The translations under genes were made by a program, and so were the position numbers. A stretch of 64,000 bases of DNA from Ranitomeya imitator (lineage: Eukaryota): contig NC_091285.1 of assembly GCF_032444005.1 (NCBI RefSeq), positions 424,390,001 to 424,454,000 of the forward strand. Direction: 5' to 3'. This document shows positions 6,241 to 52,843 of the stretch, piece after piece (the stretch's first letter is position 1; each line of letters starts with the position of its first letter). The notes under the pieces are model-generated. The model was given only the letters and a program-made list of their open reading frames with translations, ran no database searches and was not told the origin of the DNA.

Positions 6241-6318
6241 CGTATAGCCTGGACCAACGCAGTATGGATGTGGCGCATATCACGTATTAACCTCTTTCTA
6301 ACGTTTTAATCTTTTTAA

Positions 6319-8803
6319 CCCCTTAACGATCGCCGATACACCTTTTTAACGTCGCTGGTTAAGGGTACTTAAACCACAGCGCCGTTAATTAACAGCGCTG
6401 TGGAAAAAGTCTATAGCGCCTCAACCCCCCCAGTGTCAGATTTTCTCCAGGGTCTTGGCTGCCCGGGGGAGACCCTAGAAAACATGATTAGGGTCGTTTT
6501 TTACCGACCCACGGGTTGCGATTGCAGTATTAACCCTTTACCGACGACCGCAAAAAAGCACGATTTGTCATTTGATACTTACCAGTGTCTCCCGGTGTCC
6601 CTGGATCCTTCTGCTTCTCCCCACGGCCGCTGGTGTCGTCTTCTGGTACGAAAATGGTGGGCGCAGTGCACCCGCCGGGATCTGCCGATAAACACCCGGC
6701 AACCATAGGAAGATTTTTCCTATTGGTTCATTTTGGTCACTGTGATAGGCTCTCACAGTGATCAAAATAAAAAAAAATAGTAAATAACCCACCTCTTTAT
6801 CACCCCCTTAGTTAAGGAACAATAATAAAATAAAGAAAATGAATTTATTTCCATTTTCCCATTAGGGTTACAGTTGGGCTAAAGCTAGGGTTAGCATTGG
6901 GGCTATAATTAGGGTTAGTGTCTGTTTCCACGTTAAGGATTTGTTCAGGATTTGCTGCTGATTGGACACTGTGTACAGCCGCAGCGTCCAATCCGCAGCG
7001 TTCAGATGTTACAGCATAGTGGAGGGGATTTTATGAAATCCCGTCTCCACTATGCGTGGAGGGTGGCATCCGGCGGCCCTGCATAACCAGACATGTGGCG
7101 CATCTATTTATCTTGCGGGCTGGGATTAGGGTTTGGGTTAGGGATGGGGTCTGGGTTAGGATTGGGATTAGGCTTAGGGGTGTGTTGGGGTTAGGGTTGT
7201 GATCAGGGTTATGGTTAGGGGTATGTTGGGGTTAGGGTTAGGACTAGGGTTAGTGGTGTGTTGGGGTTAGGGTTGGGACTAGGGTTAGTGGTGTGTTGGG
7301 GTTAGAATTGGGGAGTTTCTACTGTTTGGGCACACCAGGGGGTCTCCAAATACGACATGGCGCCACCATTGATTTCAGCCAATTTTGCGTTCAAAAAGTC
7401 AAAGGGAGGCTTCTGAGCTCTGCTGTGCGCCCAAAGAGTGGTTTACCCCCACGTATTGGGCATCAGCATACTCAGAAAAAATTGGACAACAACGTTTGAG
7501 GTCAAATTTCTCCTGTTACCCTAGGGAAAATAAGAAATTGGGGGCTAAAAATCACCACATATCTAGATAAGCTCCTTGGGGGGGGGGGGGGGGGGGGTGT
7601 CTAGTTTCCAAAACTGGGTCAGTTGTGGGGAGTTTCTACTGTCTAGGCACATCAAGGGCTCTGCAAACACAACATGACGCCCGCAGACCATTCCATCAAA
7701 GTCTGCATCCCAAAACCTCACTACTTCCCTTCCGAACCCCGACGTGTGCCCAAACAGTGGTTTCCCTCCCCCCCCCTCCCCCCCTCCCATATATGGGGTA
7801 TCAGCGCACTCCGGACAAATTGTACAACAACTTTTGTGGTCCAATTTCTCCTGTTTCCCTTGTGAAAGTAAAAATTTGTGGGTAAAAATATCATTTTTGT
7901 GGAAAAAAAAAATGATTTTTTTTTTCACGACTCTGCCTTATAAATTTCTGTTAAGCACTTGGGGGTACTTAGTGCTCACCACACATCTAGATAAGTTCCT
8001 TAAGGGGTTTAGTTTCCAAAATGGTGTCACTTGTGGGGGGGGTTTCCATTGTTTAGGCACACCAGGGGCTCTCCAAACGCAACATGGCGTGAATCTCAAT
8101 TCCAGCCAATTCTGCATTGAAAAAGTCAAACGGCGCTCCTTCTCTTCCGAGCTCTGCCATGAGCCCAAACAGTGGTTTACCCCCTACCTATAGGGGTATC
8201 GGCGTATTCAGGAGAAATTGCGCAACAAATGTTGTGGTTCATTTTCTCTTTTTACACTTGTGAAAATAAAAAATAATGGTTCTGAAGTAACTTTTTTTTT
8301 TTTTTTTTTTTTTACAAACGTTTTAATTTTTCCTACCACATTGCTTCAGTTCCTGTTAATAAACTTCTTGAATGTGGTTTTGAGCACATTGAGGTGTACA
8401 GTTTTTAGAATGGTGTCACTTTTGGGTATTTTCTGTCATGCACATCCCTCAGTGTCTTTTTCCAAAATTGTGCTGATGTAAAGTAGACATATGGGAAATG
8501 TTATTTATTAACTATTTTGTGTGACATATCTGATTTAAGGGCATAAAAATTCAAAGTTTGAAAATCGCAAAATGTAAAATTTTTTTTCCATATTTCTGTT
8601 TTTTTCCATAAAAAAAAAAACACAAGTCATATCCAAGAAATTTTACCACTAACATGAAGTACAATATTTCACGAAAAAACAATCTCCGAATCTGCGGGAT
8701 TCGTTAAAGCTTTCCAAAGTTAGAACCTCATAAAGTGACAGTGGTTAGAATTGTAAAAATTGGCTTGGTCATTAAGTTGCAAATTGGCTCCGTCACTAAG
8801 GGG
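6319..8803. mobile_element. Non-autonomous piggyBac-type element (copy 1)
   Basis: TTAA at 6315-6318 and 8804-8807, CCCCTTA/TAAGGGG termini, internal TTAGGG-like array and about 3 tandem ~390-bp units. Confidence 0.88.
6862..7305 (+). repeat. Degenerate telomere-like (TTAGGG)n array inside piggyBac-N copy 1, interrupted by a MITE fragment at about 6908-7115
   Basis: Repeated GGGTTA/GGGTTG/GGATTA hexamers. Confidence 0.85.
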
Positions 8804-8894
8804 TTAAACTAGCTCATGCACCAGCACAACAGAGTCCAAGTCTGACGCTGAATGGTCCAGGATTATCTAGAACTGAATAATACCATAATGGAGG

Positions 8895-18095: not shown

Positions 18096-20084
18096 ATACA
18101 GTTATATTTTGTTGTGTAAAAATAACCAATTAAGTTACAGCAGAAATTCCCTGCAAGGCTCTGTAAACCAACTGAGGTGGAGGAGAGGTCCCGCCTTTTT
18201 AACCTGTGGGTTTCCTGTCCCTGAGGGCGGATCCCTCTCTCTCGTTAGTGCCGTCATGGGTTCAGAGAAATACCGTTATCGGTAAGTAACTACGATATTC
18301 TCCCACATATGGGGTATCTGCGTACTCAGGAGAAATTGCGCAACATCTTTTGTGGTCCATTTTCTCTTTTTACCCTTGTAAAAATAAAAAAAAATTGTTG
18401 CTGAAAGATTTTTAGGACTAAAAGGTTAAATGTTCATTTTTTCCTTCCACGTTGCTTCAGCTCCTTGAAGGGTTAATAAACTTCTTGATTGTGGTTTTGA
18501 GTACCTTGAGGGGTTCAGTTTTTAGTATGGTGTCACTTTTCTGTCATATACTGTAGACCCCTCAAAGTGACTTCAAATGTGCGGTGGTCCCTAAAATTTG
18601 AGGAAATGAAAAATCGCTGGTCAACTTTTAACCCTTAGGCTGTGTGCACACACATTGCGGATTTGATTGAGGATCAGCAGCATTTTTTGCCGCGCGGAAT
18701 TGCATCAAATTCGCAGTGTGGTGCACAACCAATGTAAGTCTATGGGAACTGCAGACTTGATGTGCACATGCGGAAAAATGCGCACCAAAACGCAGCTTTT
18801 TTCCCGCAGCATGTCACTACTTTTGTGCGGAACTGCAGCGTTTCTGCACCCACAGACTTGCATGGAGTCCGGCACATCTGCAGCAAAACCGCAGATTTAG
18901 AAAAGATCTGCAGTTTTGCTGCGGATGTGGGTGCGAGAAACGCTGCAGTTCAGGAGAAGTGAAGTGTGTGGGCGGTGACTGTGTGCGTGTATGTGTGTGC
19001 GGGCGCGTCTGCGGGCTGTCCGAGGGTCTGTTGGGGAATCTGCATGGCTGTCTTTTTCTCCTACACCTCATTGGGGGACACAGGACCATGGGTGTTATGC
19101 TGCTGCCACTAGGAGGACACTAAGTAAACAAAAAGATTAACTCCTCCTCTGCAGTATACACCCCTTCACTGGCTACAATTTCACCAGTTCTTGCTTAGTG
19201 TCTGTAGGAGGCACTTGGGTCTGGTTTCAGGCCCCAACTTTATTATTTTAATTTTTATTTTAATTTTTAATTTTATTTTTTACCCAACGGAGTGAAGGGG
19301 GCGACGGATCCCTTTTATAGGGTCCGCTCTCCCCCGAACCAGCAACAGGCGAGCACGGCGAGTATACCTCCCCGTCCCTCTCCTGCGACGCTGGAGCACA
19401 CCAATATTTACTGGGGCGACGGTTTCCATATTGGCCCCGATCTCCCTTCCCCCCCCCTGCTGGACGGCGAGCACACAGAGCCCGCTCTGATGTACCTCTC
19501 CGAGGGCCCTACAGACTAGGCCCACTACATGGTGTTGTACATAGGCTATTCCAGCGCCCTGTATCAGACAGGCACAGCCGGAGTAGGCCGCTCCGGCGTT
19601 ACCTGAAGAGGCTCCGAATGTGAGTGGAACGCACAGGGGGACCGCCGACCGGAGGGCACTGTAAGTACACATCCCTCCGGCCCCCCGAAGCTCTAGGGAG
19701 GCGCCGGCGTTACTGCGGGAGTCCCTGGGGAGAGGTGTCGGGGGTCTGCGGTGTCAGCGACTCTTCTTGCCGCCGCCGGGCAGGCCGGAAATTTAGTCCC
19801 CGGCTTTTTCAGCCGGAGTAGGCCGCAAGTGGGCAGATCCCTCCCACGGCTGTAACCCCGCCCCCTATATCGGCACTTCTCGTCTGGGACGAGAGGCGCC
19901 CTGCAGATCTCGGGGGCCATATTGTTTTCCCTCTCTGCAAGGAGCACACGCGTCCTCCGGCACTCCAGGAACCGCCACGGCTAATTCCTCCCTGGGGACA
20001 CAGAGACAGGACCGTGGGTAAGCTGCTTCAAGAAAGCTTAACCCTTTCCCTGCGTATACTGCCCGCTCTGTCTTTAAAGGCACT

Positions 20085-30281: not shown

Positions 30282-30688
30282 CAGTAAAGAAAAAAAACAG
30301 TTTATTGCACCTTCTTACAGCAGAGTCCATCAGTTTTACTAGTTTTTGTAACACAGTGATGCATAATTCAGCATGTGACGTGGCTGCCCCCCCAAAAAAG
30401 GCAATTACATTGCCTAATGGGACTCATTTTTCCCATGTCTTCTAGTGATGGAGGAGTCTTTTGTCTTTTTTTTTAATGCATTTCATTAGAGAAACAAGTT
30501 TTTATTACATTTATATTCTGTACATACTTTTTTTAACCCATATTTTGTACAGTTTCTTTTGGTCTACTGTACCTGTTTTTAAATTTTTGTATGTATAAAA
30601 TTAATCTATATACCCACTATTGTTTTTTTTTCTTCTCTCATTATGACATGGTAACTTTGAACATAGCTTCACATAGGAACCCTTTTAA

Positions 30689-33600
30689 CCCCTTCGTGAC
30701 TTGCGCCATACTAGTACTGAGCTTCAGGAACTGCATTTATGCCAGCCGCAGTACTAGTGCGGCACCGCGGTCTCATGGTGAGCGCTGCGGCGATCGCGTG
30801 CAGTTGTCAGCTGTATGTGAGAGCTGACACCCTGCAGCAATGCCCACGATCGGTGCTAGCACCGATCACGGGCATTTCACCCCTCTGATGCCGCTGTCAG
30901 TAGTGACAGCGACATAGAGAGGCATCGTGCAGGGACGGGGGCTCCCTGCACACTTCCTTCAGAATAATGCAATGGTCTCCATGGAGACCCTCGGATCCAA
31001 GAAGGCTACGGGGTCCTTCCGGGTCCTGCAGTGAGGTGGCCGTGCGAACGCCTGCTGAGAGCAGGCGCCGGCAAGCATCCTTCACTGCCTGTCAGATCGC
31101 TGGTCTGACACAGTGCTGTGCAAAGTGTCAGATCAGCGATCTGATGTAATATAGTGATGTACCACCCTGGGACAATGTTATAAAGTAAAAAAAAAAAAAA
31201 TTGGAATGTGTAAAAATATTTTTTTTGAAAAAAAATCCCCAAATAAAGAGAATTTTTTTTTTCCCAATAAATCCATTTATGTAAATAAAAAAAAAACAAT
31301 AAAAGTACACATTTGGTATCCCCGTGTCCGTAACTCCTCGCTCTAGAAAACTGCCCTACTAGTTAACCCCTTGAGTGAACACCATAAAAAAAGGCAAAAA
31401 AACTATGCTTTCATACCGCCGAACAAAAAGTGCAATAAAACGCGATCAAAAAGATGGATGTAAATAAAAATGGTACCGCTGAAAACGTCATCTTGTCCTG
31501 CAAAAAACAAGCCACCATACAGCTCCATGAGAAGAAAGATAAAAAAATATAGCTCACAGAATAAAGCGATGCAAAAATAAATTTTTTCTATAAAATAGTT
31601 TTTATGTAAAAGCGCCAAAACATTAAAAAAAATAAATGAGGTATCGCTGTTATCGTACTGACCCGAACAATAAAATTGCTTTATCAATTTTACCACACGT
31701 GGAACGGTGTAAACTCTGCCTCCCAAAAATCGGAATAAAAAGCGATCAAAAAATGGTACCAATCAAAATGTCATTTCGTCTCGCAAAAAAACAAGACCTC
31801 ACAAGACTCTGTGGGCCAAATTATGGAAAAATTATAGGTCTCAAAATGTGGTGATGTAAAAAATATTTTTTGCAATAAAAAGCATCTTTTAGTGTGTGAC
31901 AGCTGCCAAACATAAAAACCCGCTATAAATAGTAAATCAAACCCCCTTTTATCACCCCCTTAGTTAGGGAAAAATAATAAAATAAAAAATATATATTTCC
32001 ATTTTCCTATTAGTTAGGGCTAAAGTTAGGGTTAGGGCTAAGGTTAGGGCTTAAGTTGGGGCTTAAGTTGGGGTTAGGGTTTGGATTACATTTACGGTTG
32101 GGATTAGAGGAGGTTTAGGGGTGTGGTTATCGTTAGGGTTAGGAATGTGTGTTGGGGTTAGGTGTGGTTGGGATCAGGGTTAGGGGTATGTTCGGGTTAG
32201 GGTTGGAGCTAGAATTGGGGGGGGGGGGGAGGGAGGTTCCACTGTTTAGGCACAACAGGGGCTCTCGAAATGTGACATCGTATCCAATCTCAATTCCAGC
32301 CAATTCTGTGTTGAAAAAGTAAAAAGGTGCTCCTTCCTTTCCAAGCTCTGCCATGCACCCAAACAGTGGTTTACCCCCACATATGGGGTATCGGCATACT
32401 CAGGGCAAATTGGACAACAACTTTTGCGTACCAATTTATCCTGTTACCCATGGGAAAATAAAAATTTGGGGGCTAAAAATCATTTTTGTGGGGAAAAAAA
32501 TTATTTTTTTTATTTTCACGGCTCTGCGTTATAAACTTTAGAGAAACACTTGGGGGTTCAAAGTTCTTACAACACATCTAGATAAGTTCCTTGGGGGGGT
32601 CTAGTTTCCAAAATGTGGGAGGGTTCCTATGTGGTCACTTGTGGGGGGGGGGGGGGTTCCTACTGTTTAGGGGGTCATCAGTGGCTCTGCAAACGCAACA
32701 TGATGCCCGCAGACCATTCCATCAAAATCTGCATTTCAAAACGCCACAACTTCCCTTCCGTGCCCCGACGTGTGCCCAAACAATAGTTTTCTCCAACATA
32801 TTGGGTATCGGCGTACTCAGGACAAATTGCACAACAACTTTTGGGGTCCAATTTCTCCTGTTACCCTTGGTAAAATTCAAAATTGGGGGTGAAAAATCAT
32901 TTAAAAATATATATATTTTAAAATCACCACACATCTAGATAAGTTCCTTAGGAGGTCTACTTTCCAAAATGGGGTCACTTGTGTGTGTGTGTGTGTGTGT
33001 GTGTGGGGGGGGGGGGGTTAGGCACATCACGGGCTCTCCAAACGCAACATGGCGTCCGATCTCAATTCCAGCCAATTTTACATTGAAAAGTCAAACGGCG
33101 CTCCTTCCCTTCTGAGCTCTGCCGTGCGCCCAAACAGTGGTTTACTTGCATATGTGGGGTATCGGCGCACTCAGGACAAATTGTACAACTTTTGGGGTCC
33201 AATTTCTCCTGTTCCAATTTGTTTAATTTTACAAAGGGTATCTGAAGTAATTTTTTTGTGAAAAAGGTTAAATATTTATTTATTTATTTATTTATTTTTT
33301 TAATATACATTCCAAAAATTCCTGTGAAGCACCTGAAAGTTTAATAGACTTCTTGAATGTGGTTGTAAGCACCTTTAGGGGTGCAGTTTTTAGAATGGTG
33401 TCACTTTTCATCATTGTTTTGTCATATAGGCCCCTCAAAGTCACTTCAAGTGTGAGGTGGTCCCTAAATTTAAAAAAAAATGGTTTTGCAAATTTTGTTG
33501 TAAAAATGAGAAATCGCTGGTCAACCTTTAACTCTTATGTCCTAACCACAAAAAAAGTTTCCAAAATTATGCTGATGTAAAGCAGACATGTGGGAAATGT

Positions 33601-33790
33601 TATTTATTATCTATTTTGTGTGATATGACTCTCTAAGGGCATAAAAACCAAAAGTTTCAAAATTGTGAAATTTTCGCTAAATTTCTTCTTCCAGAGCGTT
33701 CTAGAGTTATAACCTCCTAAAGTGACAGTGGTCAGAATTGTAAAAATTGGCCCGGTCATTTAGGTGAAAACAGGCTTCATCTCAAAGGGG
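30689..33790. mobile_element. Non-autonomous piggyBac-type element (copy 2), about 400 bp downstream of the ncaph2 stop
   Basis: TTAA at 30685-30688 and 33791-33794, CCCCTT/AAGGGG termini, TTAGGG-like array at about 32015-32215, about 3 ~390-bp units. Confidence 0.9.
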
Positions 33791-33902
33791 TTAAAAATTC
33801 TCACAGATTTAACAAAGTAAACTAACATGACTACATAATGTCTAACCTGGCCAAACTATAAAAAAAACACAATTACAAGAAGTAGTTATAATTGATTACT
33901 AA

Positions 33903-36170: not shown

Positions 36171-38743
36171 ATAGTAACTTAGTTAAGGTTGAAGGAAGAC
36201 TTTAAGTCCATCTCATCTAGTTCAACCCATAGCCTAACCTAACATGTTGATCCAGAGGAAGGCAAAACAAAACCCATGTGGCGAATAGTAAGCTCCACTT
36301 TGGGGAAAAAAAATTCCTTCCCGACTCCACATACAGCAATCAGACTAGTTCCCTGGATCAACGCCCTATCAAGGAATCTAGCATATATACCCTGTAACAT
36401 TATACTTTTCAAGAAAGGTATCCAATCCCCTCTTAAATTTAAGTAATGAATCACTCATTACAACATCATACTGCAGAGAGTTCCATAGTCACACTGCTCT
36501 TACAGTAAAGAACCCTCGTCTGTTATTATGCCTAAACCTTCTTTCCTCCAGACGTAGAGGATGCCCCCTTGTCCCTGTCTCAGGTCTATGATTAAAAAGA
36601 TCATCAGAAAGGTATTTGTACTGTCCCCTCATATATTTATACATTAAAATAAGATCACCCCTTAGTCTTCGTTTTTCCAAACTAAATAGCCCCAAGTGTA
36701 ATAACCTATCTTGGTATTGCAGACCCCCCCAGTCCTCTAATAACCTTGGTCACTCTTCTCTGCATCCGCTCCAGTTCAGCTATGTCTTTCTTATACACCG
36801 GAGACCAGAACTGTGCACAGTATTCTAAGTGTGGTCGAACTAGTGACTTGTATAGACGTAAAATTATGTTCTCCTCATGTGCATCTATGCCTCTTTTAAT
36901 GCATCCCATTATTTTATTTGCCTTTGTAGCAGCTGCCTGACACTGGCCACTGAATGAGTTTGTCATACACCCAGGTCTTTTTCATTGACAGTTTTGCCCA
37001 GAGTTTTAGAATTTAGCGCATAGTTATACATCTTATTACTTCTACCCAAGTGCATGACCTTACATTTATCCCCATTAAAGCTCATTTGCCATTTATCAGC
37101 CCAAGCTTCTAGTTTACATAAATCATCCTGTAATATAAAATTGTCCTCTGTATTGATTACCCTGCAGAGTTTAGTGTCATCTGCAAATATTGAAATTCTG
37201 CTCTGAATGCCCCCTACAAGGTCATTAATAAATATGTTAAAAAGAAGGGGGCCCAATACTGACCCCTGTGGTACACCACTGCTAACCGCGACCCAGTCCG
37301 CGTTTGCTCCATTAATAACCACCCTTTGTTTCCTATCCCTGAGCCAGCTCTTAACCCACTTACACATATTTTCCCCTATCCCCATTATTCTCATTTTATG
37401 TATCAACCTTTTGTGTGGCACCGTATCAAAAGCTTTTGAAAAGTCCATATACACTACGTCCACTGGGTTCCCTTGGTCCAGTCCGGAACTTACCTCTTCA
37501 TAGAAGCTGATCAGATTAGTCTGACAGGAACGGTCCCTAGTAAACCCGTGCTGATACTGGGTCATGAGGTTATTCCTCTTCAGATACCCCAGTATAGCAT
37601 CCCTTAGAATGCCCTCCAGGATTTTAGCCACAGTAGAGGTTATGCTTACTGGCCTATAATTTCCTAGTTCAGTTTTTGTCCTCTTTTTGAATATTGGCAC
37701 CACATTTGTTATACGCCAGTCCTGTGGTACAGACCCTGTTCTTATGGAGTCTTTAAAGATTAAAAATAATGGTCTATCAACGACTGTACTTAATTCCTGC
37801 AGTACTCGGGGGTGTATCCCATCCGGGCCCGGAGATTTGTCAATTTTAGTGATTTTTAGACGCCGACGTACTTCCTGCTGGGTTAAGCAGGTGACATTTA
37901 ATGGGGAATTTTTATCACTAGTCATTTTGTCTGCCATGGGATTTTCTTGTGTAAATACTGATGAAAAAAAGTCATTTAGCATATTGGCTTTTTCCTCAGC
38001 CACCATTTCACCCAGACTATTTTTAAGGCGGCTAACACTATCATTTTTTAGTTTCTTACTATTTACGTAGTTAAAGAATATTTTGGGATTTTTTTTACTC
38101 TCTCTGGCAATGAGTCTCTCTATCTCAATCTTTGCTGCCTTGATTTGCTTATTACAGAATTCATTTAATTGTATTTATTTAATGCCTCATCACTACCTAC
38201 TTCCTTTAATTCTGTAAATGCTTTCTTTTTGTCACTAATTGTGCCCCTTACAGCTCTATTTAGCCATACTGGTTTCCTCCTATTTCTAGTATTTTTATTC
38301 CCATATGGTATATACTGTGCACAGGTCCTATCCAGGATGCTAATAAATGTCTCCCATTTTCTTTGTGTATTTTTATGTCTCAGGATATCGTCCCAGTTAA
38401 TTGCACCAAGATCCTCTCTCATCCGTTGGAAATTTGCCCTCCTGAAGTTTAGTGTCCTTGTAACCCCTCTACTACACATCTTATTAAAGGATACATGAAA
38501 ACTTCTTATTTTGTGATCACTATTCCCCAAGTGACCCCCAACCCTTATATTTGCTATGCGGTCTGGCCTGTTGGTTAATATTAGGTCTAGCAGTGCCCCC
38601 CTTCTTGTTGGGTCCTGAACCAATTGTGAACGGTAATTGTGTCTCATAGTTGTCAAAAACCGATTACCTTTGCTGGAACTGCAGATTTCCGTTCCCCAAT
38701 CTATTTCAGGGTAGTTGAAGTCCCCCATAATAATGACTTCCCC
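36171..38743 (-). mobile_element. CR1-clade LINE, 3' part (EN C-terminus, RT, 3'UTR, TACTATGT-type tail)
   Basis: GEVIIMGDFNYPEIDW, KSPGPDGIHPRVL, NYRPVSITS, QHGF, DFSKAFDTV, GVPQGSVLGP, FADDTKL, LRGDLI; tail at about 36171-36185. Confidence 0.95.
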
Positions 38744-43655: not shown

Positions 43656-44168
43656 GACTGTGTGCACATGTTGCGGATTTGATTGCAGATCTGCAGCGTT
43701 TTTTGCCGCACAGAATTGCATTAAATCCGCAGTGTAGTGTACAACCAATGTAAGTCTATGGGAGCCGCAGACTTGTTGTGCACATGCTGCGGAAAAGGCC
43801 ACACCGAAACGCAGCTTTTTTTTTTTCTCCGCAGCATGTCACTTCTTTTGTGCCGAACTGCAGCGTTTCTGCTCACTTACGCCGGGATCACACTACAGCG
43901 AGATACGGCCAAGTCTCGCAGGTTAAAACCAAGTTCTGGCACCGGCACTCTGGAGCGGAGCGTGCGGCCGCACAGCAATACGTGGAGCCGCACGCTCCGC
44001 TCCGGAATGCCGGTGCCAGAGCTTGTATTTAACCTGCGAGACTCGGCCGTATCTCGCTGTACTGTGACTCCGGCCTTACACTTTCATTGAGATGTAAAAA
44101 ATATCTGCAGTTTTGCTGCGGATGTGGGTCCGAGAAATGCTGCAGTTCAAGAGGAGGGAAGTGTGTGG
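43656..44168. mobile_element. Harbinger-like MITE left arm (same family as 18638)
   Basis: TAA-GACTGTGTGCACATG..., colinear with 18638-18980. Confidence 0.75.
43880..44075. mobile_element. Small fold-back Harbinger-like MITE nested in the previous MITE
   Basis: TTA on both sides (43877-43879, 44076-44078) and long inverted arms (TACAGCGAGATACGGCC). Confidence 0.88.
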
Positions 44169-44169
44169 G

Positions 44170-45870
44170 CGGTGACCAGGGCCGGACTGGCCATCGGGCA
44201 CTTCTGGCAAATGCCAGTAGTGGGCCGCTGCACTCTTTCCCCCCTACTCCCGCCAGTGCCGCCGCCGCATTCAACTATACCGGCGTCTATGACGCCAGTA
44301 TAGTTCAATGCAATGATGGAGGAGAGAGCGTCCGCTGACGCTCCCTCTCCCATCATTCCCCGCTCTGCCTCTGACACTGCGGGTGCGTGATGACATCATA
44401 TCATCGCACACCTGCTGTGTCCCGGGCAGACTGCAGCCGCCGAGACAGGAGCAGCGCGGGCAAGAGGAAAGGTGAGGAGAGTGTGGAGCCATTATCGCGG
44501 GGATGAGATGTGGGCTGTGCTGTGTATACCACTGTGTGGGCTGTGCTGTGTATACCACTGTGTGGGCTGTGTATATACCACTGTGTGGGCTGTGTATATA
44601 CCACTGTGTGGGCTGTGTATATACCACTGTGGGCTGTGCTGTGTATATACCACTGTGTGGGCTGTGCTGTGTATATACCACTGTGTGGGCTGTGCTGTGT
44701 ATATACCACTGTGTGGGCTGTGCTGTGTATATACCACTGTGTGGGCTGTGCTGTGTATATACCACTGTGTGGGCTGTGCTGTGTATATACCACTGTGTGG
44801 GCTGTGCTGTGTATATACCACTGTGTGGGCTGTGTATATACCACTGTGTGGGCTGTGCTGTGTATACCACTGTGTGGGCTGTGCTGTGTATACCACTGTG
44901 TGGGCTGTGTAGTGTATATACCACTGTGTGGGCTGTGCTGTGTATATACCACTGTGTGGGCTGTGTATATACCACTGTGTGGGCTGTGCTGTGTATATAC
45001 CAGTGTGGGCTGTGCTGTATGTACCACTGTGTGGGCTGTGCTGTATGTACCACTGTGTGGGCTGTGCTGTGCATGTACCACTGTGTGGGCTGTGCTGTGC
45101 ATGTACCACTGTGTGGGCTGTGCATGTACCACTGTGTGGGCTGTGCTGTGTATGTACCACTGTGTGGGCTGTGCTGTGTATGTACCACTGTGTGGGCTGT
45201 GCTGTGTATGTACCACTGTGTGGGCTGTGCTGTGTATACTACTCCGCGGGCTGTGCTGTATATACTACTACGCGTGTTGTGCTGTATATACAACGACCCG
45301 GGCTGTGCTGTATACTACTACGCGGGCTGTGCTATATACTATGCAAGTTGTGCTATATTATATGCGGGCTTTGATATATACTATGGGAGGTATATTATAT
45401 TCTATGGGGGAGGCCGTGTTATATACTATGTGGCTGTGTTATATACTATGTGGCTGTGTTATATACTATTGCGGGGGTATATTCTATTCTATGGGGGAGG
45501 CTGTCTTATATACTATGGGGGGTATATTATATTCTATGGGGGAGGCTGTCTTTTATATACTATGGGGGCTATATTATATTCGATGTGGGCTACATTATAT
45601 ATTATGGGAAGGTGGGCTGCATTATATTCTATGGGGGGCTGTATTAGATTTTATGAGGGATGATTGCATCATACTCTTTGATGGGGCTGCATTATATTCT
45701 ATGGGGAGGTGGGCTGCATTCTATTCTATTCGGGGCTACATTATCTATGGGGGCTGTATTATATTTATATTCTATGAGGGGTGATTGCATCATACTCTAT
45801 GGGGGGCTGCATTATATTATTTGGGGGGTTACATTATACTCTGGGGTGGCTGCATTATACTCAGCAAATT
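44170..45870. mobile_element. hAT-like non-autonomous element (CAGGGCCGGACTGGCC start) carrying large minisatellites; right end not seen
   Basis: A CAGGGCCGG terminus abruptly replaces the MITE sequence at about 44170. Confidence 0.5.
44510..45850. repeat. Compound minisatellite: 28/26/23-bp GGCTGTGCTGTGTATATACCACTGTGTG units grading into ~21-bp GGGGCTGCATTATATTCTATG units
   Basis: Directly visible tandem array; source of many spurious ORFs. Confidence 0.95.
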
Positions 45871-46167: not shown

Positions 46168-48013
46168 AAAGCCGGCAATTCAATTACCGGCTTTTGCCTT
46201 CTCCTTCCTAAACCCGACATGATATGAGACATGGTTTACATACAGTAAACCATCTCATATCCCCTTTTTTTTGCATATTCCACACTACTAATGTTATTAG
46301 TGTGTATATGCAAAATTTGGCCGTTCTAGCTAGTAAAATAAGGGGTTAAATGGCGGAAAAAATTGGCGTGGGCTCCCGCACAATTTTCTCCGGCAGAGTA
46401 GTAAAGCCAGTGACTGAGGGCTGATATTAATAGCCTGGAGAGGGTCCATGGTTATTGCCCCCCCCCCCCCCCCCTGGCTAAAAACATCTGCCCCCAGCCA
46501 CCCCAGAAAAGGCACATCTGGAAGATGCGCCTATTCTGGCACTTGGCCACTCTCTTCCCATTCCCGTGTAGCGGTGGGATATGGGGTAATGAAGGGTTAA
46601 TGCCACCTTGCTATTGTAAGGTGACATTAAGCCTAATTAATATTGGAGAGGCGTCAATTATGACACCTATCCATTATTATTCCAAAACTAGTAAAGGGTT
46701 AAAAAATAAAACACACATATTATTAAAAATTAATTTATTGAAAAAATCACAAAGGTTGTTGTATTAATTTATTCTACTCTCAATCCACTCACTGAAGACC
46801 CTCGATCTGTAAATTAAAAAAAAAATAATAAACCAACAATATACATACCTTCCGAGGATCTGTAAGGTCCAACGATGTAAATCCATCTGAAGGGGTTAAA
46901 ATATTTTGCTGCCAGGAGCTCCGCTAATGCAGGCTGCTCATGTCTGCAAAACCCCGGCGAATGAAGGTAAAGTAGGTCAATGACCTATATTTAGCTTCAT
47001 TTGCGGTGAGGCGCCCTCTGCTGGCTGTTCCTAGATCGTGGGAACTTTCCTAGAAAGCTCCCTTGCTCGAGTTCATATGAGGACAACCAGCAGAGGGCGC
47101 CCTCTTATGATCTCGAGCAAGGGAGCTTTCTAGGAAAGTTCCCACGATCTAGGAACAGCCAGCAGAGGGCGCCTCACCGCAAATGAAGCTAAATATAGGT
47201 CATTGACCTATATTTAGCTTCATTCGCCGGGGTTTTGCAGACATGAGCAGCCTGCATTAGCGGAGCTCGTGTCTGCAAAATATTTTAACCCCTTCAGATG
47301 GATTTACATCGTTGGACCTTACAGATCCTCGGAAGGTATGGATATTGTTGGTTTATTATTTTTTTTTAAATTACAGATCGAGGGTCTTCAGTGAGTGGAT
47401 TGAGAGTAGAATAAATTAATACAACAACCTTTGTGATTTTTTCAATAAATTAATTTTTAATAATATGTGTGTTTTATTTTTTAACCCTTTACTAGTTTTG
47501 GATTAATAATGGATAGGTGTCATAATTGACGCCTCTCCATTATTAATTAGGCTTAATGTCACCTTACAATAGCAAGGTGGCATTAACCCTTCATTACCCC
47601 ATATCCCACCGCTACACGGGAATGGGAAGAGAGTGGCCAAGTGCCAGAATAGGCGCATCTTCCAGATGTGCCTTTTCTGGGGTGGCTGGGGGCAGATGTT
47701 TTTAGCCGGGGGGGGGGGGGGGGCAATAACCATGGACCCTCTCCAGGCTATTAATATCAGCCCTCAGTCACTGGCTTTACTACTCTGCCGGAGAAAATTG
47801 TGCGGGAGCCCACGCCAATTTTTTCCGCCATTTAACCCCTTATTTTACTAGCTAGAACGGCCAAATTTTGCATATACACACTAATAACATTAGTAGTGTG
47901 GAATATGCAAAAAAAAGGGGATATGAGATGGTTTACTGTATGTAAACCATGTCTCATATCATGTCGGGTTTAGGAAGGAGAAGGCAAAAGCCGGTAATTG
48001 AATTGCCGGCTTT
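46168..48013. repeat. Near-perfect inverted repeat, arms about 915 bp, spacer about 18 nt
   Basis: 46168-47082 is the reverse complement of 47101-48013, with only scattered mismatches and homopolymer length differences. Confidence 0.95.
47011..47172. promoter_or_regulatory. Three CTCF core-motif matches (CCAGCAGAGGGCGC) at the palindrome centre
   Basis: 47011-47024 (-), 47087-47100 (+) and 47159-47172 (+), each an exact match to CCASYAGRKGGCRS. Binding untested. Confidence 0.5.
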
Positions 48014-48066
48014 CTGCTATATCGCGCTGGATGAAATATTAATATATATACATATATGCGTCTACT

Positions 48067-48115
<49 letters not shown>

Positions 48116-48381
48116 TATATATATACAGTGTATATATAGACAGTATATATGTTTTGTTTTTTTTTTAACACATGGATCCCTTGTATAGCCGTATGTCGGT
48201 TTTGCAAGCCTGCGATAAAAACACGCAGTACGGATTACATACGGAGGATGCCATGCGCAAAAAACGCTGAAACACCCTGCCTACGGAGGAGCTACGGACC
48301 ACTATTTTCGGGACTTTTCAGCGTATTACGGCCATAATATACGGACCGTATTTTCATACGCTGAGTGTGACGCCGGCCTAA

Positions 48382-49299
48382 GGCTACTTTCACACTTGCA
48401 TCGGTACGGGGCCGTCGCAAACCTTCGGCCAGACGTACCGACGGACGTTATGCTAAATTTAGCACAACGTGGGCAGCGGATGCAGTTTTACAACGCATCC
48501 GCTGTCCATTGTGATGAGCGTGGAGGAGGGGGCGGAGTTCCAGCCACGCATGCGCGGTCGGAAATGGCAGACACGTCGCACAAAAAAAGTTACATTGAAC
48601 TTTTTTTTGTGCGTTGCGTCTGCCAAAACACGACGGATCTGTTGCTAATACAAGTCTATGGGTACAAAATGCATCCTGTGAGCACATTTGCAGGATCCTT
48701 TTTTTTTCTGCCGGATTTTTTTTTTCCCGCCATATCCGTTTTTTACCACCTGATCGTTTTTTTCCGCCAGATCCGTTTTTTTCTCATAGAGTTGTATTAG
48801 CGCCGGAGTGCGTCTGATGGCCACACGTTTCATCCGTTTTTTGCTAGATCAGTCGCTGTGCATTTTTTCGACGTACCGAAAAACCGTTCCTCTGTATGTG
48901 TTTTCCGTCCAGTGGAAACAGCTTTTTTGACGGATCCTGCAAAAACGGATTAAACGTGTGGCCACCAGGCGCAATCCGGCGCTAATACAACTCTGAGAAA
49001 AAACAGATCTGGCGGAAAGAAAAACATCCGGTGGAATAAAATGGATCCAGCGGAAAAAAAACGGATTCGGTTGAAAAAAACGGATCTGGCGGAAAAAACG
49101 ATCCGGTGCAAATAAACGGATCCTGCAAATGTGCTCGCAGGATGCGTTTTACCCATAGTCTTGTATTATCTTTATTTATTTATCTTTATTTTTTTTTTAT
49201 ATAGCGCTAACATATTCCGCAGCGCTTTACACACATTATCATTGCTGTCCCCATTGGGGCTCACAATCTAAATTCCCTGTCAGTATGTCTTTGGAATGT

Positions 49300-49330
<31 letters not shown>

Positions 49331-49759
49331 ACGCAAACACGGAGAGAACATACAAACTCTTTGCAGATGTTGTCCTTATTGGGGCTTGAACCCAGGACTC
49401 CAGCGCTGCAAGGCTGCTGTGCTAACCACTGCGCCACCGTGCTGCCCTGTATTAGCGACGGATCGTGACGGATGGCCAGACATCGCCTCCGTCGTGCTAC
49501 GGATCCGTCGTGTTTTGGCGGACCGTCGGCACGAAAAAATGTTCAATTGAAAATTTTTTCGGCCGTCTCGCCCGCCATTTTCTACCGCGCATGTGCGGCA
49601 GAAACTCCGCCCCCTCCTCCCCGCACTTCAGAATGGGCAGCGGATGCGTTGAAAAGCTGCATCCGCTGCCCACGTCGTGCACAAATTTCACAACGTGCGT
49701 CCGTACGTCGGCCCGACGCATAGCGATGGACCCGTACTGACGCAAGAGTGAAAGAGGCC
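48382..49759. mobile_element. Harbinger-like MITE inserted at the right TSD of the previous element
   Basis: GGCTACTTTCACACTTGC / GCAAGAGTGAAAGAGGCC termini, TWA flanks, internal inverted arms. Confidence 0.8.
49169..49447 (-). mobile_element. tRNA-derived SINE (V-SINE-like)
   Basis: Pol III A box TGGCGCAGTGG (49436-49426), B box GGTTCAAGC (about 49392-49384), V-domain-like GTTTCCTCCGGGCACTCCGGTTTCCTCCCAC, A-rich tail, 7-bp TSD TGTATTA. Confidence 0.9.
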
Positions 49760-49763
49760 TTAA

Positions 49764-50830
49764 TGAGCGTTGAATTTAAAAAGAAAAAAAAACGGCGTGG
49801 GCTCCCGCGCAATTTTCTGCGCCAGAGGGGGAAAGCCAACGGCCGGGGCCAATATCTGTAGCCTGCTATGAATACCAGCCCGCAGCTGTCTGTGTAGCCT
49901 TTACTGGATATTAAAAGAAGGGGACCCCCCCCCCCCAAAAAAAAAATGACGTGGGGTCCCCCTATATTTTATAGCCAGAAAGGCTACGCGGACAGCTGCA
50001 GGTTGATATTCATAGCTTAGAGAGGGGCCATGGATATTGCCAAGCCCCCCCCCCCGGCTACAAATACCAGTCCGCAGCCGCCCCAGAAATGGCGCATCTG
50101 TAAGATGCGCCAATTCCGGCACTTAGCCCCTCTCTTCCCACTCCCGAGTAGCGGTGGGATATGGGGTAATAAGGGGTTAATGTCACCTTGCTATTGTAAG
50201 GTGACATTAAGCCGGGTTAATAACGGAGAGGCGTCAATAGGACGCCTATCCATTATTAATCCAATAGTAAGAAAGGGTTAATAAAACACACACACATTTT
50301 GAAAAAAGTATTTTAATATTCTTCATTTAACCATACTTACCATACTTCAGCGCCTGCAAAAAAAAGTAAAATAATAAACCGTATACTACCTATCCGCCGT
50401 GGTCCAATTAATAACGAGTGTCCCACGACGATCTCCCCTATAGAACAGTGACATCGGGTGATGTCACTGCTCTATAGGACCCTCAGTGACACACTGACAG
50501 GAGACAATGGCTCCTGCAGTGCATCACCGAGGTTACTCTAGTTCACTGGTCTCACTTTATGGCAATTGCTGCGTGGGAAAATGTCTCACCCAGCAATGCC
50601 AATAGCGAGACTAGGGACTATTTTCTCACAGGGGCGTAGGAATACCTTGTGAGGAATACATGATGGAAGGATACCTTCCAATCATTGTGTTCCTGGAGCC
50701 CCTGGAGAGTGGTCGCATCAACTGATGCTCCTGCTCTCCACGGGAGATCGTCGTGGGACACTTGTTTTAATTGGATTTCTGCGGACAGGGAGTATATTGT
50801 TTATTATTTTAATATTTTTTACAGGTGACA
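49764..50830. mobile_element. Partial relative of the 45880-48378 element (left arm and its own central hairpin)
   Basis: GGCGTGGGCTCCCGC...GGGATATGGGGTAAT...GTGACATTAAGCC is colinear with about 46365-46720; inverted segment at about 50340-50830. Confidence 0.65.
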
Positions 50831-50919
50831 ATGGCTTCGGGGAACAAAGTGACAAGTGATGGTGAGTATGTACTCTGTTATATGTACTGTATGTCTGTAG
50901 TATGTATGTATGTACTGTA

Positions 50920-52625
50920 TGTCGCAGGTCGTTGCATGGTGCATGTCACATGGTGCATGTTGTCGCATGGTGCATGTCGTCGCATGGTGCATGTCGCATG
51001 TTGTCGCATTGTGCATTTCGCATGGTGAATGGTGCATGTCGCATGCCGTCACATGGTGCATGCAGCATGTCGCATGGTGCATGTCACATGGTGCATGTTG
51101 TCGCATGGTGCATGTTGTCGCATGGTGCATGTCAGCGCATGGTGCATGTCGGTGCATGTCGCATGTCGTCGCATGGTGCATGTCACATGCCGTCACATGG
51201 TGCATGCAGCATGTCGCATGGTGCATGTCGTCGCATGTAGCATGTCGCATGTCGTCGCATGGTGAATGTCGCATGTCATCGCATGGTGCATGTAGCATGT
51301 CGTCGCATGGTGCATTTCGTATGGTGAATGTCGCATGTCGTCGTATGGTGCATGCCGTCACATGGTGCATGTTGCATGTCGTCACATGGTGTATGTCGCC
51401 GCATGGTGCATGTCGTCGCATGTCATCGTATGTTGGAAACTTGGGCTGAAAGGTGGCAGATGAGGTTTAACAATGATAAATGTAAGGTTATACACATGGG
51501 AAGAAGGAATCAATATCACCATTACACACCGAACGGGAAACCACTGGGTAAATCTGACAGGGAGAAGGACTTGGGGATCCTAGTTAATGATAAACTTACC
51601 TGGAGCAGCCAGTGCCAGGCAGCAGCTGCCAAGGCAAACAGGATCATGGGGTGCATTAAAAGAGGTCTGGATACACATGATGAGAGCATTATACTGCCTC
51701 AGTACAAATCCCTAGTTAGACCGCACATGGAGTACTGTGTCCAGTTTTGGGCACCGGTGCTCAGGAAGGATATAATGGAACTAGAGAGAGTACAAAGGAG
51801 GGCAACAAAATTAATAAAGGGGATGGGAGAACTACAATACCCAGATAGATTAGCGAAATTAGGATTATTTAGTCTAGAAAAAAGACGACTGAGGGGCGAT
51901 CTAATAACCATGTATAAGTATATAAGGGGACAATACAAATATCTCGCTGAGGAAGGTGACGGGCACAAGGGGGCATTCTTTGCGTCTGGAGGAGAGAAGG
52001 TTTTCCACCAACATAGAAGAGGATTCTTTACTGTTAGGGCAGTGAGAATCTGGAATTGCTTGCCTGAGGAGGTGGTGATGGCGAACTCAGTCGAGGGGTT
52101 CAAGAGAGGCCTGGATGTCTTCCTGGAGCAGAACAATATTGTATCATACAATTGGGTTCTGTAGAAGGACGTAGATCTGGGGATTTATTATGATGGAATA
52201 TAGGCTGAACTGGATGGACAAATGTCTTTTTTCGGCCTTACTAACTATGTTACTATGTATGTCGTCGCATGGTGCATGTCGTCGCATGGTGCATGTCGTC
52301 GCATGGTGCATGTCGTCGCATGGTGAATGTCGCATGTCATCGCATGGTGCATGTAGCATGTCGTCGCATGGTGCATTTCGCATGGTGAATGTCGCATGTC
52401 GTCGCATGGTGCATGCCGTCACATGGTGTATGTCGCCGCATGGTGCATGTCGCCGCATGTAGCATGTTGCCGCATGGTGCATGTCGTCGCATGGTGCATG
52501 TCGTCGCATGGTGCATGTCGTCGCATGGTGCATGTCGTCGCATGGTGCCACATGTAGCATGTCGCCGTATGGTGTCGCATGGTGCATGTCATCGCATGTA
52601 GCATGTCGCATGGTCCATGTGTTGC
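50920..52625. repeat. GTCGCATGGTGCAT-type short-unit minisatellite, split by a CR1 fragment
   Basis: Directly visible at 50920-51431 and 52259-52625. Confidence 0.95.
51432..52258 (+). mobile_element. 5'-truncated CR1 (RT C-terminus + 3'UTR + ACTATGT tail)
   Basis: WAERWQMRFN.DKCKVIH.G, EKDLGI, YKSLVRPHMEYCVQFW, LRGDLI.MYK; tail CTAACTATGTTACTATGT. Confidence 0.93.
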
Positions 52626-52843
52626 ATGATGTCACATGGTGTGTGTTGTATGTATGTACTGTGTAAGTGTTCTTTTTTTTTTACATTCAACACATTAGCC
52701 GGATGATGGGACTACTACTGTCCCATCATTGGCTAATGTGTCACTCACTGTCAGTGTATCAGGCAGAGCCCGATGGGACTTGTAGTCCCATCGGACGATG
52801 CTTGCACACACACACAGCGCCGCCACACACACACACTGCCAGA

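What the first reader, a model, noticed from the sequence alone, without database searches (positions are those of the whole stretch)
47011..47172. Divergent triple CTCF motif at the palindrome centre: a mobile insulator cassette?
CCAGCAGAGGGCGC matches the CTCF core consensus CCASYAGRKGGCRS exactly and occurs three times in 162 bp, oriented left, right, right. The ~18-nt loop of the palindrome is mostly one such motif. Divergent CTCF clusters are the typical arrangement at domain boundaries. TE-spread CTCF sites are established in mammals (B2 SINEs); a DNA transposon whose symmetry builds a boundary-like cassette in frogs is not something I know to be described.
Basis: partly seen in the sequence, partly recalled or inferred. 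Interest (0 to 1): 0.75.

Follow-up and report, generated by a model that had tools for sequence, protein, structure and literature searches.

The report
Frog palindromic repeat with three CTCF motifs
Three perfect matches to the landing site of the genome-folding protein CTCF really do sit at the centre of a 1.85-kb mirror-image repeat in this poison-frog genome. Their boundary-like arrangement follows from the repeat's symmetry plus one small local duplication, and nothing yet shows that they bind CTCF or insulate anything.

Summary
CCAGCAGAGGGCGC occurs at 47011-47024 (-), 47087-47100 (+) and 47159-47172 (+). These are the only exact CTCF-consensus matches in 64 kb (0.05 expected). They lie at the axis of a 1,846-bp palindrome (46168-48013), and the 18-nt loop is mostly the middle motif.

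The three sites are not independent. The outer two are mirror images of one site. The middle one is a local copy of the same roughly 20-nt unit.

All three sit in a 385-bp core (46900-47284) bounded by TTAA. Around it are four arm modules that each end in GGGTTAA, the end signature of piggyBac-type elements elsewhere in this window. A decayed relative 2 kb downstream has the same outer modules but a different core without the motif.

The arm differences are nearly all transversions, include no CpG transitions and cluster near the axis. This copy is therefore young, and intact motifs say nothing about selection.

I could not fetch other family copies or lay reads. Mobility rests on two unchecked notes from this scan, which found similar palindromes on other DNA of this genome. 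CTCF sites carried by non-autonomous DNA transposons are already reported in zebrafish.

Verdict: a real, non-coding palindromic repeat with plausible but untested CTCF sites.

The parts
46168..48013 (.). Whole palindrome, 1,846 bp, non-coding
   Evidence: the arms are 97.7% alike over a 1,850-column alignment; the ends are sharp, with no TSD and no weaker palindrome beyond them; there are only short ORFs, with no protein relatives.
46168..47082 (+). Left arm (915 nt)
   Evidence: it differs from the right arm by 11 substitutions and 4 indel nucleotides; as single-stranded DNA it folds to -156.6 kcal/mol, with less perfect local hairpins than the right arm.
47101..48013 (-). Right arm (913 nt), the mirror of the left arm
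   Evidence: it folds to -172.8 kcal/mol. In three difference clusters it carries the version that makes the local hairpin perfect.
47083..47100 (+). Asymmetric 18-nt loop, ACAACCAGCAGAGGGCGC; 14 of its 18 nt are the central CTCF motif
   Evidence: I5: 18 nt between the innermost arms.
47011..47024 (-). CTCF core-consensus match, left, pointing left
47087..47100 (+). CTCF core-consensus match, central (in the loop), pointing right
   Evidence: It shares a 20-nt block (one mismatch) with the outer unit, as read.
47159..47172 (+). CTCF core-consensus match, right, pointing right; the mirror image of the left one
46900..47284 (.). 385-bp palindromic core. It holds all three motifs and both IR-1 sites, and is bounded by TTAA at 46896-46899 and 47285-47288.
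   Evidence: layers and TTAA positions; the DNA hairpin folds to -227 kcal/mol, z -35; there is no other copy in the window.
46343..46349 (+). GGGTTAA ending arm module S1 (46168-46349); its mirror TTAACCC is at 47832-47838
   Evidence: four per arm against 0.06 expected. AAGGGGTTAA is the terminal motif of other TTAA-flanked elements in the window (for example 6314-8808 and 30684-33795).
46594..46600 (+). GGGTTAA ending arm module S2 (46350-46600); its mirror is at 47583-47589
46696..46702 (+). GGGTTAA ending arm module S3 (46601-46702); its mirror is at 47481-47487
46893..46899 (+). GGGTTAA ending arm module S4 (46703-46899); its mirror is at 47285-47291
46974..46986 (.). AGGTCAATGACCT, an inverted repeat with 1-nt spacer at the tip of a local hairpin (left arm)
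   Evidence: two matches against 0.01 expected.
47197..47209 (.). AGGTCATTGACCT, the mirror copy; it is the centre of a perfect 45-nt local palindrome
46419..46729 (+). High-copy part of the arm (most of S2-S3); its mirror is at 47454-47762
   Evidence: it is 84-85% alike to 50001-50306; low-coverage runs of five other organisms hold 0.33-0.39 of the palindrome's words. That equals the share of this segment counted twice (an inference, because no reads were laid).
49786..50825 (+). Decayed relative. It has S2-, S3- and S4-like modules in the same order, then a different palindromic core (50412-50766) between two TTAAs, with no CTCF motif.

Best explanation
This is a young copy of a non-coding, hairpin-rich repeat that is palindromic over its full length. 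It is of the foldback or MITE-like kind and is built from modules with piggyBac-type TTAA ends.

Its 385-bp core is bounded by TTAA and carries a roughly 20-25-nt unit containing a perfect CTCF core motif. That unit appears once in each arm, because the arms mirror each other, and a third time in the loop, through a local duplication at the fold-back point. The divergent, boundary-like layout is therefore a by-product of symmetry.

The sites are good enough to bind CTCF if the chromatin is open. Their only CpG is at the methylation-tolerant position 12. At this locus they are most likely neutral cargo, raw material at best, not a selected insulator.

Shown here: the motifs, the palindrome, the module structure, the youth of the copy and the lack of coding capacity. 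Inferred: that the element is a dispersed family, and that CTCF can bind it.
For: - Motifs and palindrome.
- Non-independence of the motifs: and direct reading.
- Repeat nature: part of each arm recurs at 84-85% identity 2 kb away with the same module order. Low-coverage runs of several organisms hold about a third of its words. The surrounding 10 kb holds four other palindromic elements 66-86% symmetric.
- TTAA and GGGTTAA modules occur four times per arm against 0.06 expected, and the same end motif terminates other elements in the window.
- No tRNA and no Rfam family above threshold. No protein relatives of its open frames.
- Youth: the arms differ at 11 substitutions, 10 of them transversions, with no CpG transition despite about 23 CpGs per arm.
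- Not an artefact: the differences are clustered, are not confined to homopolymer runs and change local hairpin quality. The nearest N runs are more than 18 kb away.
- CTCF plausibility: the consensus is from PMC6746451. Methylation at position 12 is tolerated (PMC6222495).
- Two notes from this scan report 1.76- and 1.89-kb palindromes with the same motifs and IR-1 sites on other pieces of this genome. These are unchecked leads.
Against: - There is no target-site duplication at 46168/48013, and the termini are not typical of any superfamily.
- No second copy of the core or of the outermost 189 bp exists in the window.
- No family copy could be fetched from any collection.
- The read-laying run was lost, so neither copy number nor the presence of this palindrome in an independent sample was checked.
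- Zero differences in the outer 306 nt and a rising density toward the axis would also fit a local fold-back extension of an older, smaller palindrome.
- A perfect triple match is rare, and this genome has many CTCF-motif repeats. That could mean something selects for them.
Confidence: 0.55

Rival explanations
1. This is a local fold-back duplication, not an insertion. An older, smaller palindrome (roughly the inner 450 nt of each arm) sat beside modules S1-S3 on one side only. A break followed by intrastrand priming on the old arms then copied the left flank in reverse, extending the palindrome outward. The CTCF motifs are incidental, and this copy is not mobile.
For: - The outer 306 nt of the arms are 100% identical, and all differences lie inward with density rising toward the axis.
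- The ends are sharp and have no TSD.
- The relative at 49786-50825 shows the one-sided state this model predicts: S2-S3-like modules on the left only, next to a smaller palindrome.
Against: - Two notes report palindromes of nearly the same length (1.76 and 1.89 kb) with the same three motifs and IR-1 sites on other pieces of the genome. Independent local events would not repeat like that. These notes are unchecked.
- The relative's core is unrelated to this one.
Confidence: 0.22
2. One reading: the family is a mobile insulator cassette. CTCF occupies the three sites, blocks cohesin from both sides and creates or strengthens domain boundaries wherever the element lands.
For: - There are three perfect core matches 72-76 bp apart in divergent orientation.
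- The only CpG is at the methylation-tolerant position 12.
- The core's CpG observed/expected ratio is 0.74, against 0.62 for the window.
- There is precedent for CTCF sites borne by DNA transposons in zebrafish.
Against: - No occupancy, Hi-C or methylation data could be consulted.
- The geometry is explained by symmetry.
- The copy is too young for motif intactness to show constraint.
- The related element nearby lacks the motif.
- This genome carries CTCF-like motifs in very abundant satellites and minisatellites, so most such motifs are unlikely to be boundaries.
Confidence: 0.1
3. The resemblance to CTCF is coincidental. The repeated GC-rich unit, which includes the perfect 14-nt palindrome AGAGGGCGCCCTCT at 47092-47105, is a binding or cleavage site for the element's own mobilising enzyme or another dimeric factor, or simply the fold-back point.
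For: - The central motif overlaps a perfect local palindrome (read).
- The element is a hierarchy of small hairpins.
- The IR-1 sites arise in the same way, at hairpin tips.
Against: - A 14/14 consensus match is expected 0.05 times in 64 kb.
- The outer copies of the unit are not themselves perfect palindromes.
Confidence: 0.08
4. This is an assembly or library artefact: a fold-back chimeric long read assembled as a palindrome.
For: - An earlier follow-up in this genome found a 12.9-kb error-free palindrome missing from the only deep sample.
- The deep runs of organism A hold only 0.67 of this palindrome's sampled words.
Against: - The arms differ by clustered substitutions that are not confined to homopolymer runs and change local hairpins.
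- Similar palindromes are noted elsewhere.
- Older palindromic elements are common around it.
- No assembly gap is nearby.
Confidence: 0.05

Closest known systems
CTCF sites borne by transposable elements: rodent B2 SINEs, and zebrafish non-autonomous DNA transposons including HATN9_DR
   Same: A repeat carries a strong CTCF core motif and could seed sites wherever it lands. In zebrafish the carriers are non-autonomous DNA transposons (PMC7182764; PMC9341505).
   Different: Occupancy has been shown in those systems and is untested here. Here the motif is present three times within 162 bp at the axis of a full-length palindrome, giving a ready-made divergent cluster. I found no frog example in the searched library.
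Foldback-type and long-TIR MITE-like elements (Drosophila FB, zebrafish Angel, Xenopus palindromic MITEs; named from general knowledge)
   Same: It is non-coding, almost the whole length is two inverted arms around a short loop, and the sequence is rich in nested hairpins.
   Different: No TSD was found at the outer ends. The arms are not tandem subrepeats but four different modules that each end in GGGTTAA. Family copy number was not measured.
piggyBac-type (TTAA-specific) elements and their MITEs
   Same: TTAA bounds the core and every arm module. The AAGGGG/CCCCTT motif next to TTAA is the terminal signature of other elements in this window. An unresolved 4-nt TTAA hairpin on a transposon end (PMC7351741) would, once replicated, give exactly the end-TTAA-inverted-end junction seen if the inner layers are removed.
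   Different: The ends face inside-out: 3' ends are on the left and 5' ends on the right. The core begins AATATT, not CCC. The outermost ends lack TTAA. It is therefore not a conventional piggyBac element.
Clustered divergent CTCF sites at domain boundaries
   Same: Several motifs within about 160 bp, in the order reverse then forward.
   Different: Only sequence is available. There is no evidence of a boundary at this locus.

Membership tests
CTCF binding site | Match to the 14-bp core consensus CCASYAGRKGGCRS | tested here: met
   Three exact matches. The consensus is as cited in PMC6746451.
CTCF binding site | No CpG at the methylation-sensitive position 2 | tested here: met
   Position 2 is C followed by A, and the only CpG is C12-G13 (read). 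The rule is from PMC6222495.
CTCF binding site | Occupied by CTCF in cells | not testable with these tools
   No ChIP or CUT&RUN data are accessible.
Insulator or domain boundary | Divergent cluster of sites | tested here: met
   The orientation is -, +, + within 162 bp. This follows from the palindrome symmetry.
Insulator or domain boundary | Insulation in contact maps, or enhancer blocking | not testable with these tools
   No Hi-C data or assay are available.
Non-autonomous cut-and-paste DNA transposon (MITE-like) | Terminal inverted repeats | tested here: met
   The whole element is two inverted arms, and the outer 306 nt are 100% complementary.
Non-autonomous cut-and-paste DNA transposon (MITE-like) | Target-site duplication at the ends | tested here: not met
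   There is no direct repeat of 5 nt or more abutting 46168/48013. The only shared word, GCGCTG, lies 9-10 nt away on each side.
Non-autonomous cut-and-paste DNA transposon (MITE-like) | Many dispersed copies with the same ends | tested here: inconclusive
   The window has only a partial relative at 84-85% identity. Other copies are known only from unchecked notes. Fetching copies failed, and the read-laying run was lost.
Non-autonomous cut-and-paste DNA transposon (MITE-like) | No coding capacity | tested here: met
   The longest stop-free stretch is 117 aa, and no relatives were found.
piggyBac-type element | TTAA at both ends, with CCC...GGG termini directly inside | tested here: not met
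   The core has TTAA on both sides but begins AATATT. The GGGTTAA/TTAACCC motifs face away from the axis, and the outer ends have no TTAA.
SINE or structured-RNA-derived repeat | tRNA, 5S, 7SL or ribozyme module | tested here: not met
   ARAGORN found none. Rfam gave only sub-threshold miRNA-hairpin look-alikes.

The most novel reading that the evidence does not exclude
A piggyBac-associated foldback family in dendrobatid frogs spreads a ready-made divergent triplet of methylation-tolerant CTCF sites. These sites are occupied in vivo and create or reinforce loop anchors and domain boundaries at its insertions. This would be the first such case in amphibians, and the first in which a transposon's own mirror symmetry supplies the boundary geometry.
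Probability: 0.1. Interest if true: 0.7.

Novelty: new member of a known kind. Interest (0 to 1): 0.35.

Why it matters
If the family is abundant and its sites are bound, poison-frog genomes would offer a natural experiment. Filled and empty alleles of a single insertion that delivers both orientations of CTCF at once could show how transposons rewire chromosome folding outside mammals.

Most likely, though, this is ordinary repeat cargo. It is also a caution that palindromic repeats produce boundary-like motif layouts automatically.

The nested module structure around TTAA may interest people who study how palindromic repeats arise from transposon-end hairpins.

Tried and rejected
- **Laying reads.** Copy number, presence in independent samples and per-base variation among copies are all unmeasured. 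I ended tool ranges at 48050 and masked those places in the BLAST script.
- **Fetching other family copies through open frames.** Three protein word searches found nothing: the 58-aa frame across all three motifs, a 58-aa frame beside them, and the 117-aa frame in the high-copy part.
- **Exact-pattern scans of metagenome contigs.** A 31-mer at the outer motif and a 30-mer of the high-copy segment both found nothing.
- **Earlier findings by sequence.** Blank.
- **Hammerhead or Penelope-type head-to-head insertion**, which other palindromes in this genome suggested. Rejected: there is no ribozyme or other Rfam family.
- **SINE origin.** Rejected.
- **Continuation of the palindrome into the flanks, or a TSD.** Neither was found.
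- **Homology between this core and the core of the neighbouring relative.** None beyond the A-rich module end.
- **Gene context of the element** (intronic or intergenic). Not determined.

Full report
**The observation**

The 14-mer CCAGCAGAGGGCGC occurs at 47011-47024 on the minus strand and at 47087-47100 and 47159-47172 on the plus strand. These are the only three exact matches to CCASYAGRKGGCRS in the 64-kb window. Dinucleotide-preserving shuffles give 0.05 expected, and none of 100 reached three. Allowing one mismatch adds three scattered sites at 19450, 20392 and 57293. The consensus is the human genome-wide ChIP-chip consensus as quoted in PMC6746451.

The motifs lie at the axis of a palindrome spanning 46168-48013. 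The arms are 97.7% alike over a 1,850-column alignment. The innermost arms are separated by 18 nt (47083-47100), of which 14 are the central motif.

**How independent the three motifs are**

The outer two are the same site seen through the mirror. The 25-nt unit AGGAACAGCCAGCAGAGGGCGCCTC is identical at 47008-47032 (-) and 47151-47175 (+). The central motif shares with that unit a 20-nt block with one mismatch, ACA[A/G]CCAGCAGAGGGCGCC, read directly. It is therefore a local duplicate sitting at the fold-back point.

The structure is A'-M'-B'-M-B-M-A, where M is the motif unit and B is a 58-nt spacer. One original motif plus mirror symmetry plus one short duplication accounts for everything. 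Any motif that lies in a palindrome arm yields a divergent or convergent pair automatically.

**Anatomy of the element**

The palindrome is non-coding. The longest stop-free stretch is 117 aa, and three word searches with its frames found no relatives. It has no tRNA-like part. No Rfam family reaches threshold; the only hits are sub-threshold miRNA-precursor look-alikes that reflect the central hairpin.

Each arm contains GGGTTAA four times in one orientation (46343, 46594, 46696 and 46893), mirrored as TTAACCC in the other arm. Shuffles give 0.06 expected per arm. These motifs cut each arm into modules:
- S1: 46168-46349
- S2: 46350-46600
- S3: 46601-46702
- S4: 46703-46899

Between the arms is a 385-bp core (46900-47284) with TTAA on both sides.

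The extended motif AAGGGGTTAAA is over-represented in the window, with 16 matches against 2.4 expected. It marks the ends of other elements whose flanks differ after the TTAA, for example the pairs 6314/8798 and 30684/33785. It is therefore the terminal signature of TTAA-specific, piggyBac-type elements in this genome.

In the palindrome these ends face inside-out, with 3' ends on the left and 5' ends on the right. The outermost ends have no TTAA, no CCC/GGG termini and no target-site duplication, and the palindrome does not continue weakly into the flanks. The element is therefore not a conventional piggyBac MITE.

The core holds all three CTCF motifs and two AGGTCAnTGACCT sites. It folds as single-stranded DNA into one hairpin of -227 kcal/mol, z -35. 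The arms are full of smaller nested hairpins.

**Relatives**

Within the window, 46419-46729 and its mirror match 50001-50306 at 84-85% identity. Positions 46357-46437 match 49786-49865 at 78%. That relative keeps the order of S2-, S3- and S4-like modules. It then has a different palindromic core (50412-50766), again between two TTAAs, with no CTCF motif and no detectable homology to this core. On its right side the outer modules are not mirrored.

The surrounding 10 kb contains four more palindromic elements that are 66-86% symmetric. Such structures are common and of many ages here.

Public runs: two deep runs of organism A hold 0.67 of the sampled words. Small runs of five other organisms hold 0.33-0.39. 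That equals the share of the 311-bp S2-S3 segment counted twice. I infer that only this segment is very abundant and shared among species.

The scan's earlier notes identify the genome as a poison frog. They list two palindromes on other pieces of it, of 1.76 and 1.89 kb, with the same three motifs and the two IR-1 sites. These notes are unchecked leads, but they are the main reason to prefer a dispersed family over a one-off event.

**Age and reality of this copy**

The arms differ at 11 substitutions and 4 indel nucleotides.
- Ten of the 11 substitutions are transversions.
- Eight put the same base on the plus strand at mirrored positions.
- None is a CpG transition, although each arm has about 23 CpGs.
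- No substitution lies in the outer 475 nt. By my own arithmetic from the positions, that has a chance of about 3e-4 per substitution, or about 3e-3 if the clusters count as eight events.

In three clusters the right-arm version makes a local hairpin perfect while the left-arm version does not. The whole-arm folding energies are -172.8 and -156.6 kcal/mol.

This is not the signature of slow neutral decay, so the copy is effectively very young. The differences are either inherited asymmetries of a master copy or hairpin-templated changes. Two things follow. Intact motifs in this copy carry no information about selection. And clustered substitutions outside homopolymer runs argue against a fold-back read artefact, as does the absence of nearby gaps.

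**Mechanism**

My best reading (0.55) is that this is a young member of a non-coding foldback or MITE-like family built from TTAA-ended modules, with the CTCF-like triplet as cargo of its core.

The main rival (0.22) is a local fold-back extension of an older, smaller palindrome. It would explain the perfect outer arms, the sharp ends without a TSD and the one-sided relative. It is contradicted by the reported copies of the same size elsewhere.

A speculative origin for the layering: piggyBac excision makes 4-nt TTAA hairpins on transposon ends (PMC7351741). A hairpin-capped end that escaped opening and was replicated would give exactly the end-TTAA-inverted-end junction. That is what each layer would show if the layers inside it were removed. 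I could not test this.

**CTCF function**

The sites are as good as a core match can be. Their spacing of 72-76 bp would in principle allow co-occupancy. The only CpG is C12-G13; methylation at position 12 does not impair binding, whereas methylation at position 2 does (PMC6222495). Repressive chromatin on repeats could still exclude CTCF.

This genome also carries CTCF-like motifs in very abundant satellites and minisatellites. Most such motifs cannot be boundaries. I give 0.10 to a real insulator role.

**Comparison and novelty**

Transposable elements that spread CTCF sites are established for rodent SINEs. In zebrafish, non-autonomous DNA transposons are significantly enriched at CTCF sites (PMC7182764), and HATN9_DR alone contributes 647 CTCF-bound sites (PMC9341505). 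My literature searches found no frog case.

The element is a new member of a known kind: a motif-bearing non-autonomous repeat. Its particular feature is that the symmetry supplies both orientations at once. Interest is moderate to low until a genome-wide census and binding data exist.

Noticed in passing
window 46168-48013: The differences between the arms are very unusual. Ten of 11 substitutions are transversions, eight put the same base at mirrored positions, and none is a CpG transition. No substitution lies in the outer 475 nt, and most differences sit near the axis. In three clusters the right arm has the version that makes a local hairpin perfect. This suggests hairpin-templated changes or inherited asymmetry, not point-mutation decay.
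   Followed up: partly
window 46343-46899 and mirror 47285-47838: The palindrome has a Russian-doll layout. Four modules per arm each end in GGGTTAA, so every layer would read end-TTAA-inverted end if the layers inside it were removed. That is the junction expected from a replicated piggyBac-type TTAA end hairpin.
   Followed up: partly
window 50353-50825: The neighbouring relative has a different palindromic core (50412-50766), also lying between two TTAAs at the axis of an S4-like palindrome. Two unrelated cores therefore occupy the same axial TTAA position in related hosts.
   Followed up: partly
window 43881-44074, 48379-49762, 49865-50016: Further palindromic elements of various ages (73-86% symmetric) are packed within 10 kb, so this region is dense in foldback-like repeats.
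   Followed up: no
window 6314-8808 and 30684-33795: Two elements are bounded by TTAACCCCTT ... AAGGGGTTAA. Their right-hand ends (leading into 8798 and 33785) are clearly alike, which makes them piggyBac-type non-autonomous elements. Several other families in the window share only the 10-nt end motif.
   Followed up: partly
window 44509-45862: A long GT-rich minisatellite block lies just upstream of the palindrome. It includes about 31 copies with a 28-nt period, followed by related units of 20-47 nt.
   Followed up: no
window 50905-51435 and 52254-52653: Two blocks of a GCATGGTGCATGTC-type minisatellite flank a 620-bp segment (51436-52055) that matches 36481-37109 in reverse at 70% identity.
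   Followed up: no
window 46974-46986 and 47197-47209: There are two perfect AGGTCAnTGACCT inverted repeats of nuclear-receptor IR-1 type (0.01 expected). Both are tips of local hairpins, so they are probably structural by-products.
   Followed up: partly
window 47030-47153: The central hairpin scores as a sub-threshold look-alike of several miRNA precursor families (best 52 bits against a gathering score of 90). If transcribed, the palindrome would form a long double-stranded RNA hairpin. Some runs that may be RNA hold 0.26-0.30 of its words, but which part they hold is unknown.
   Followed up: no
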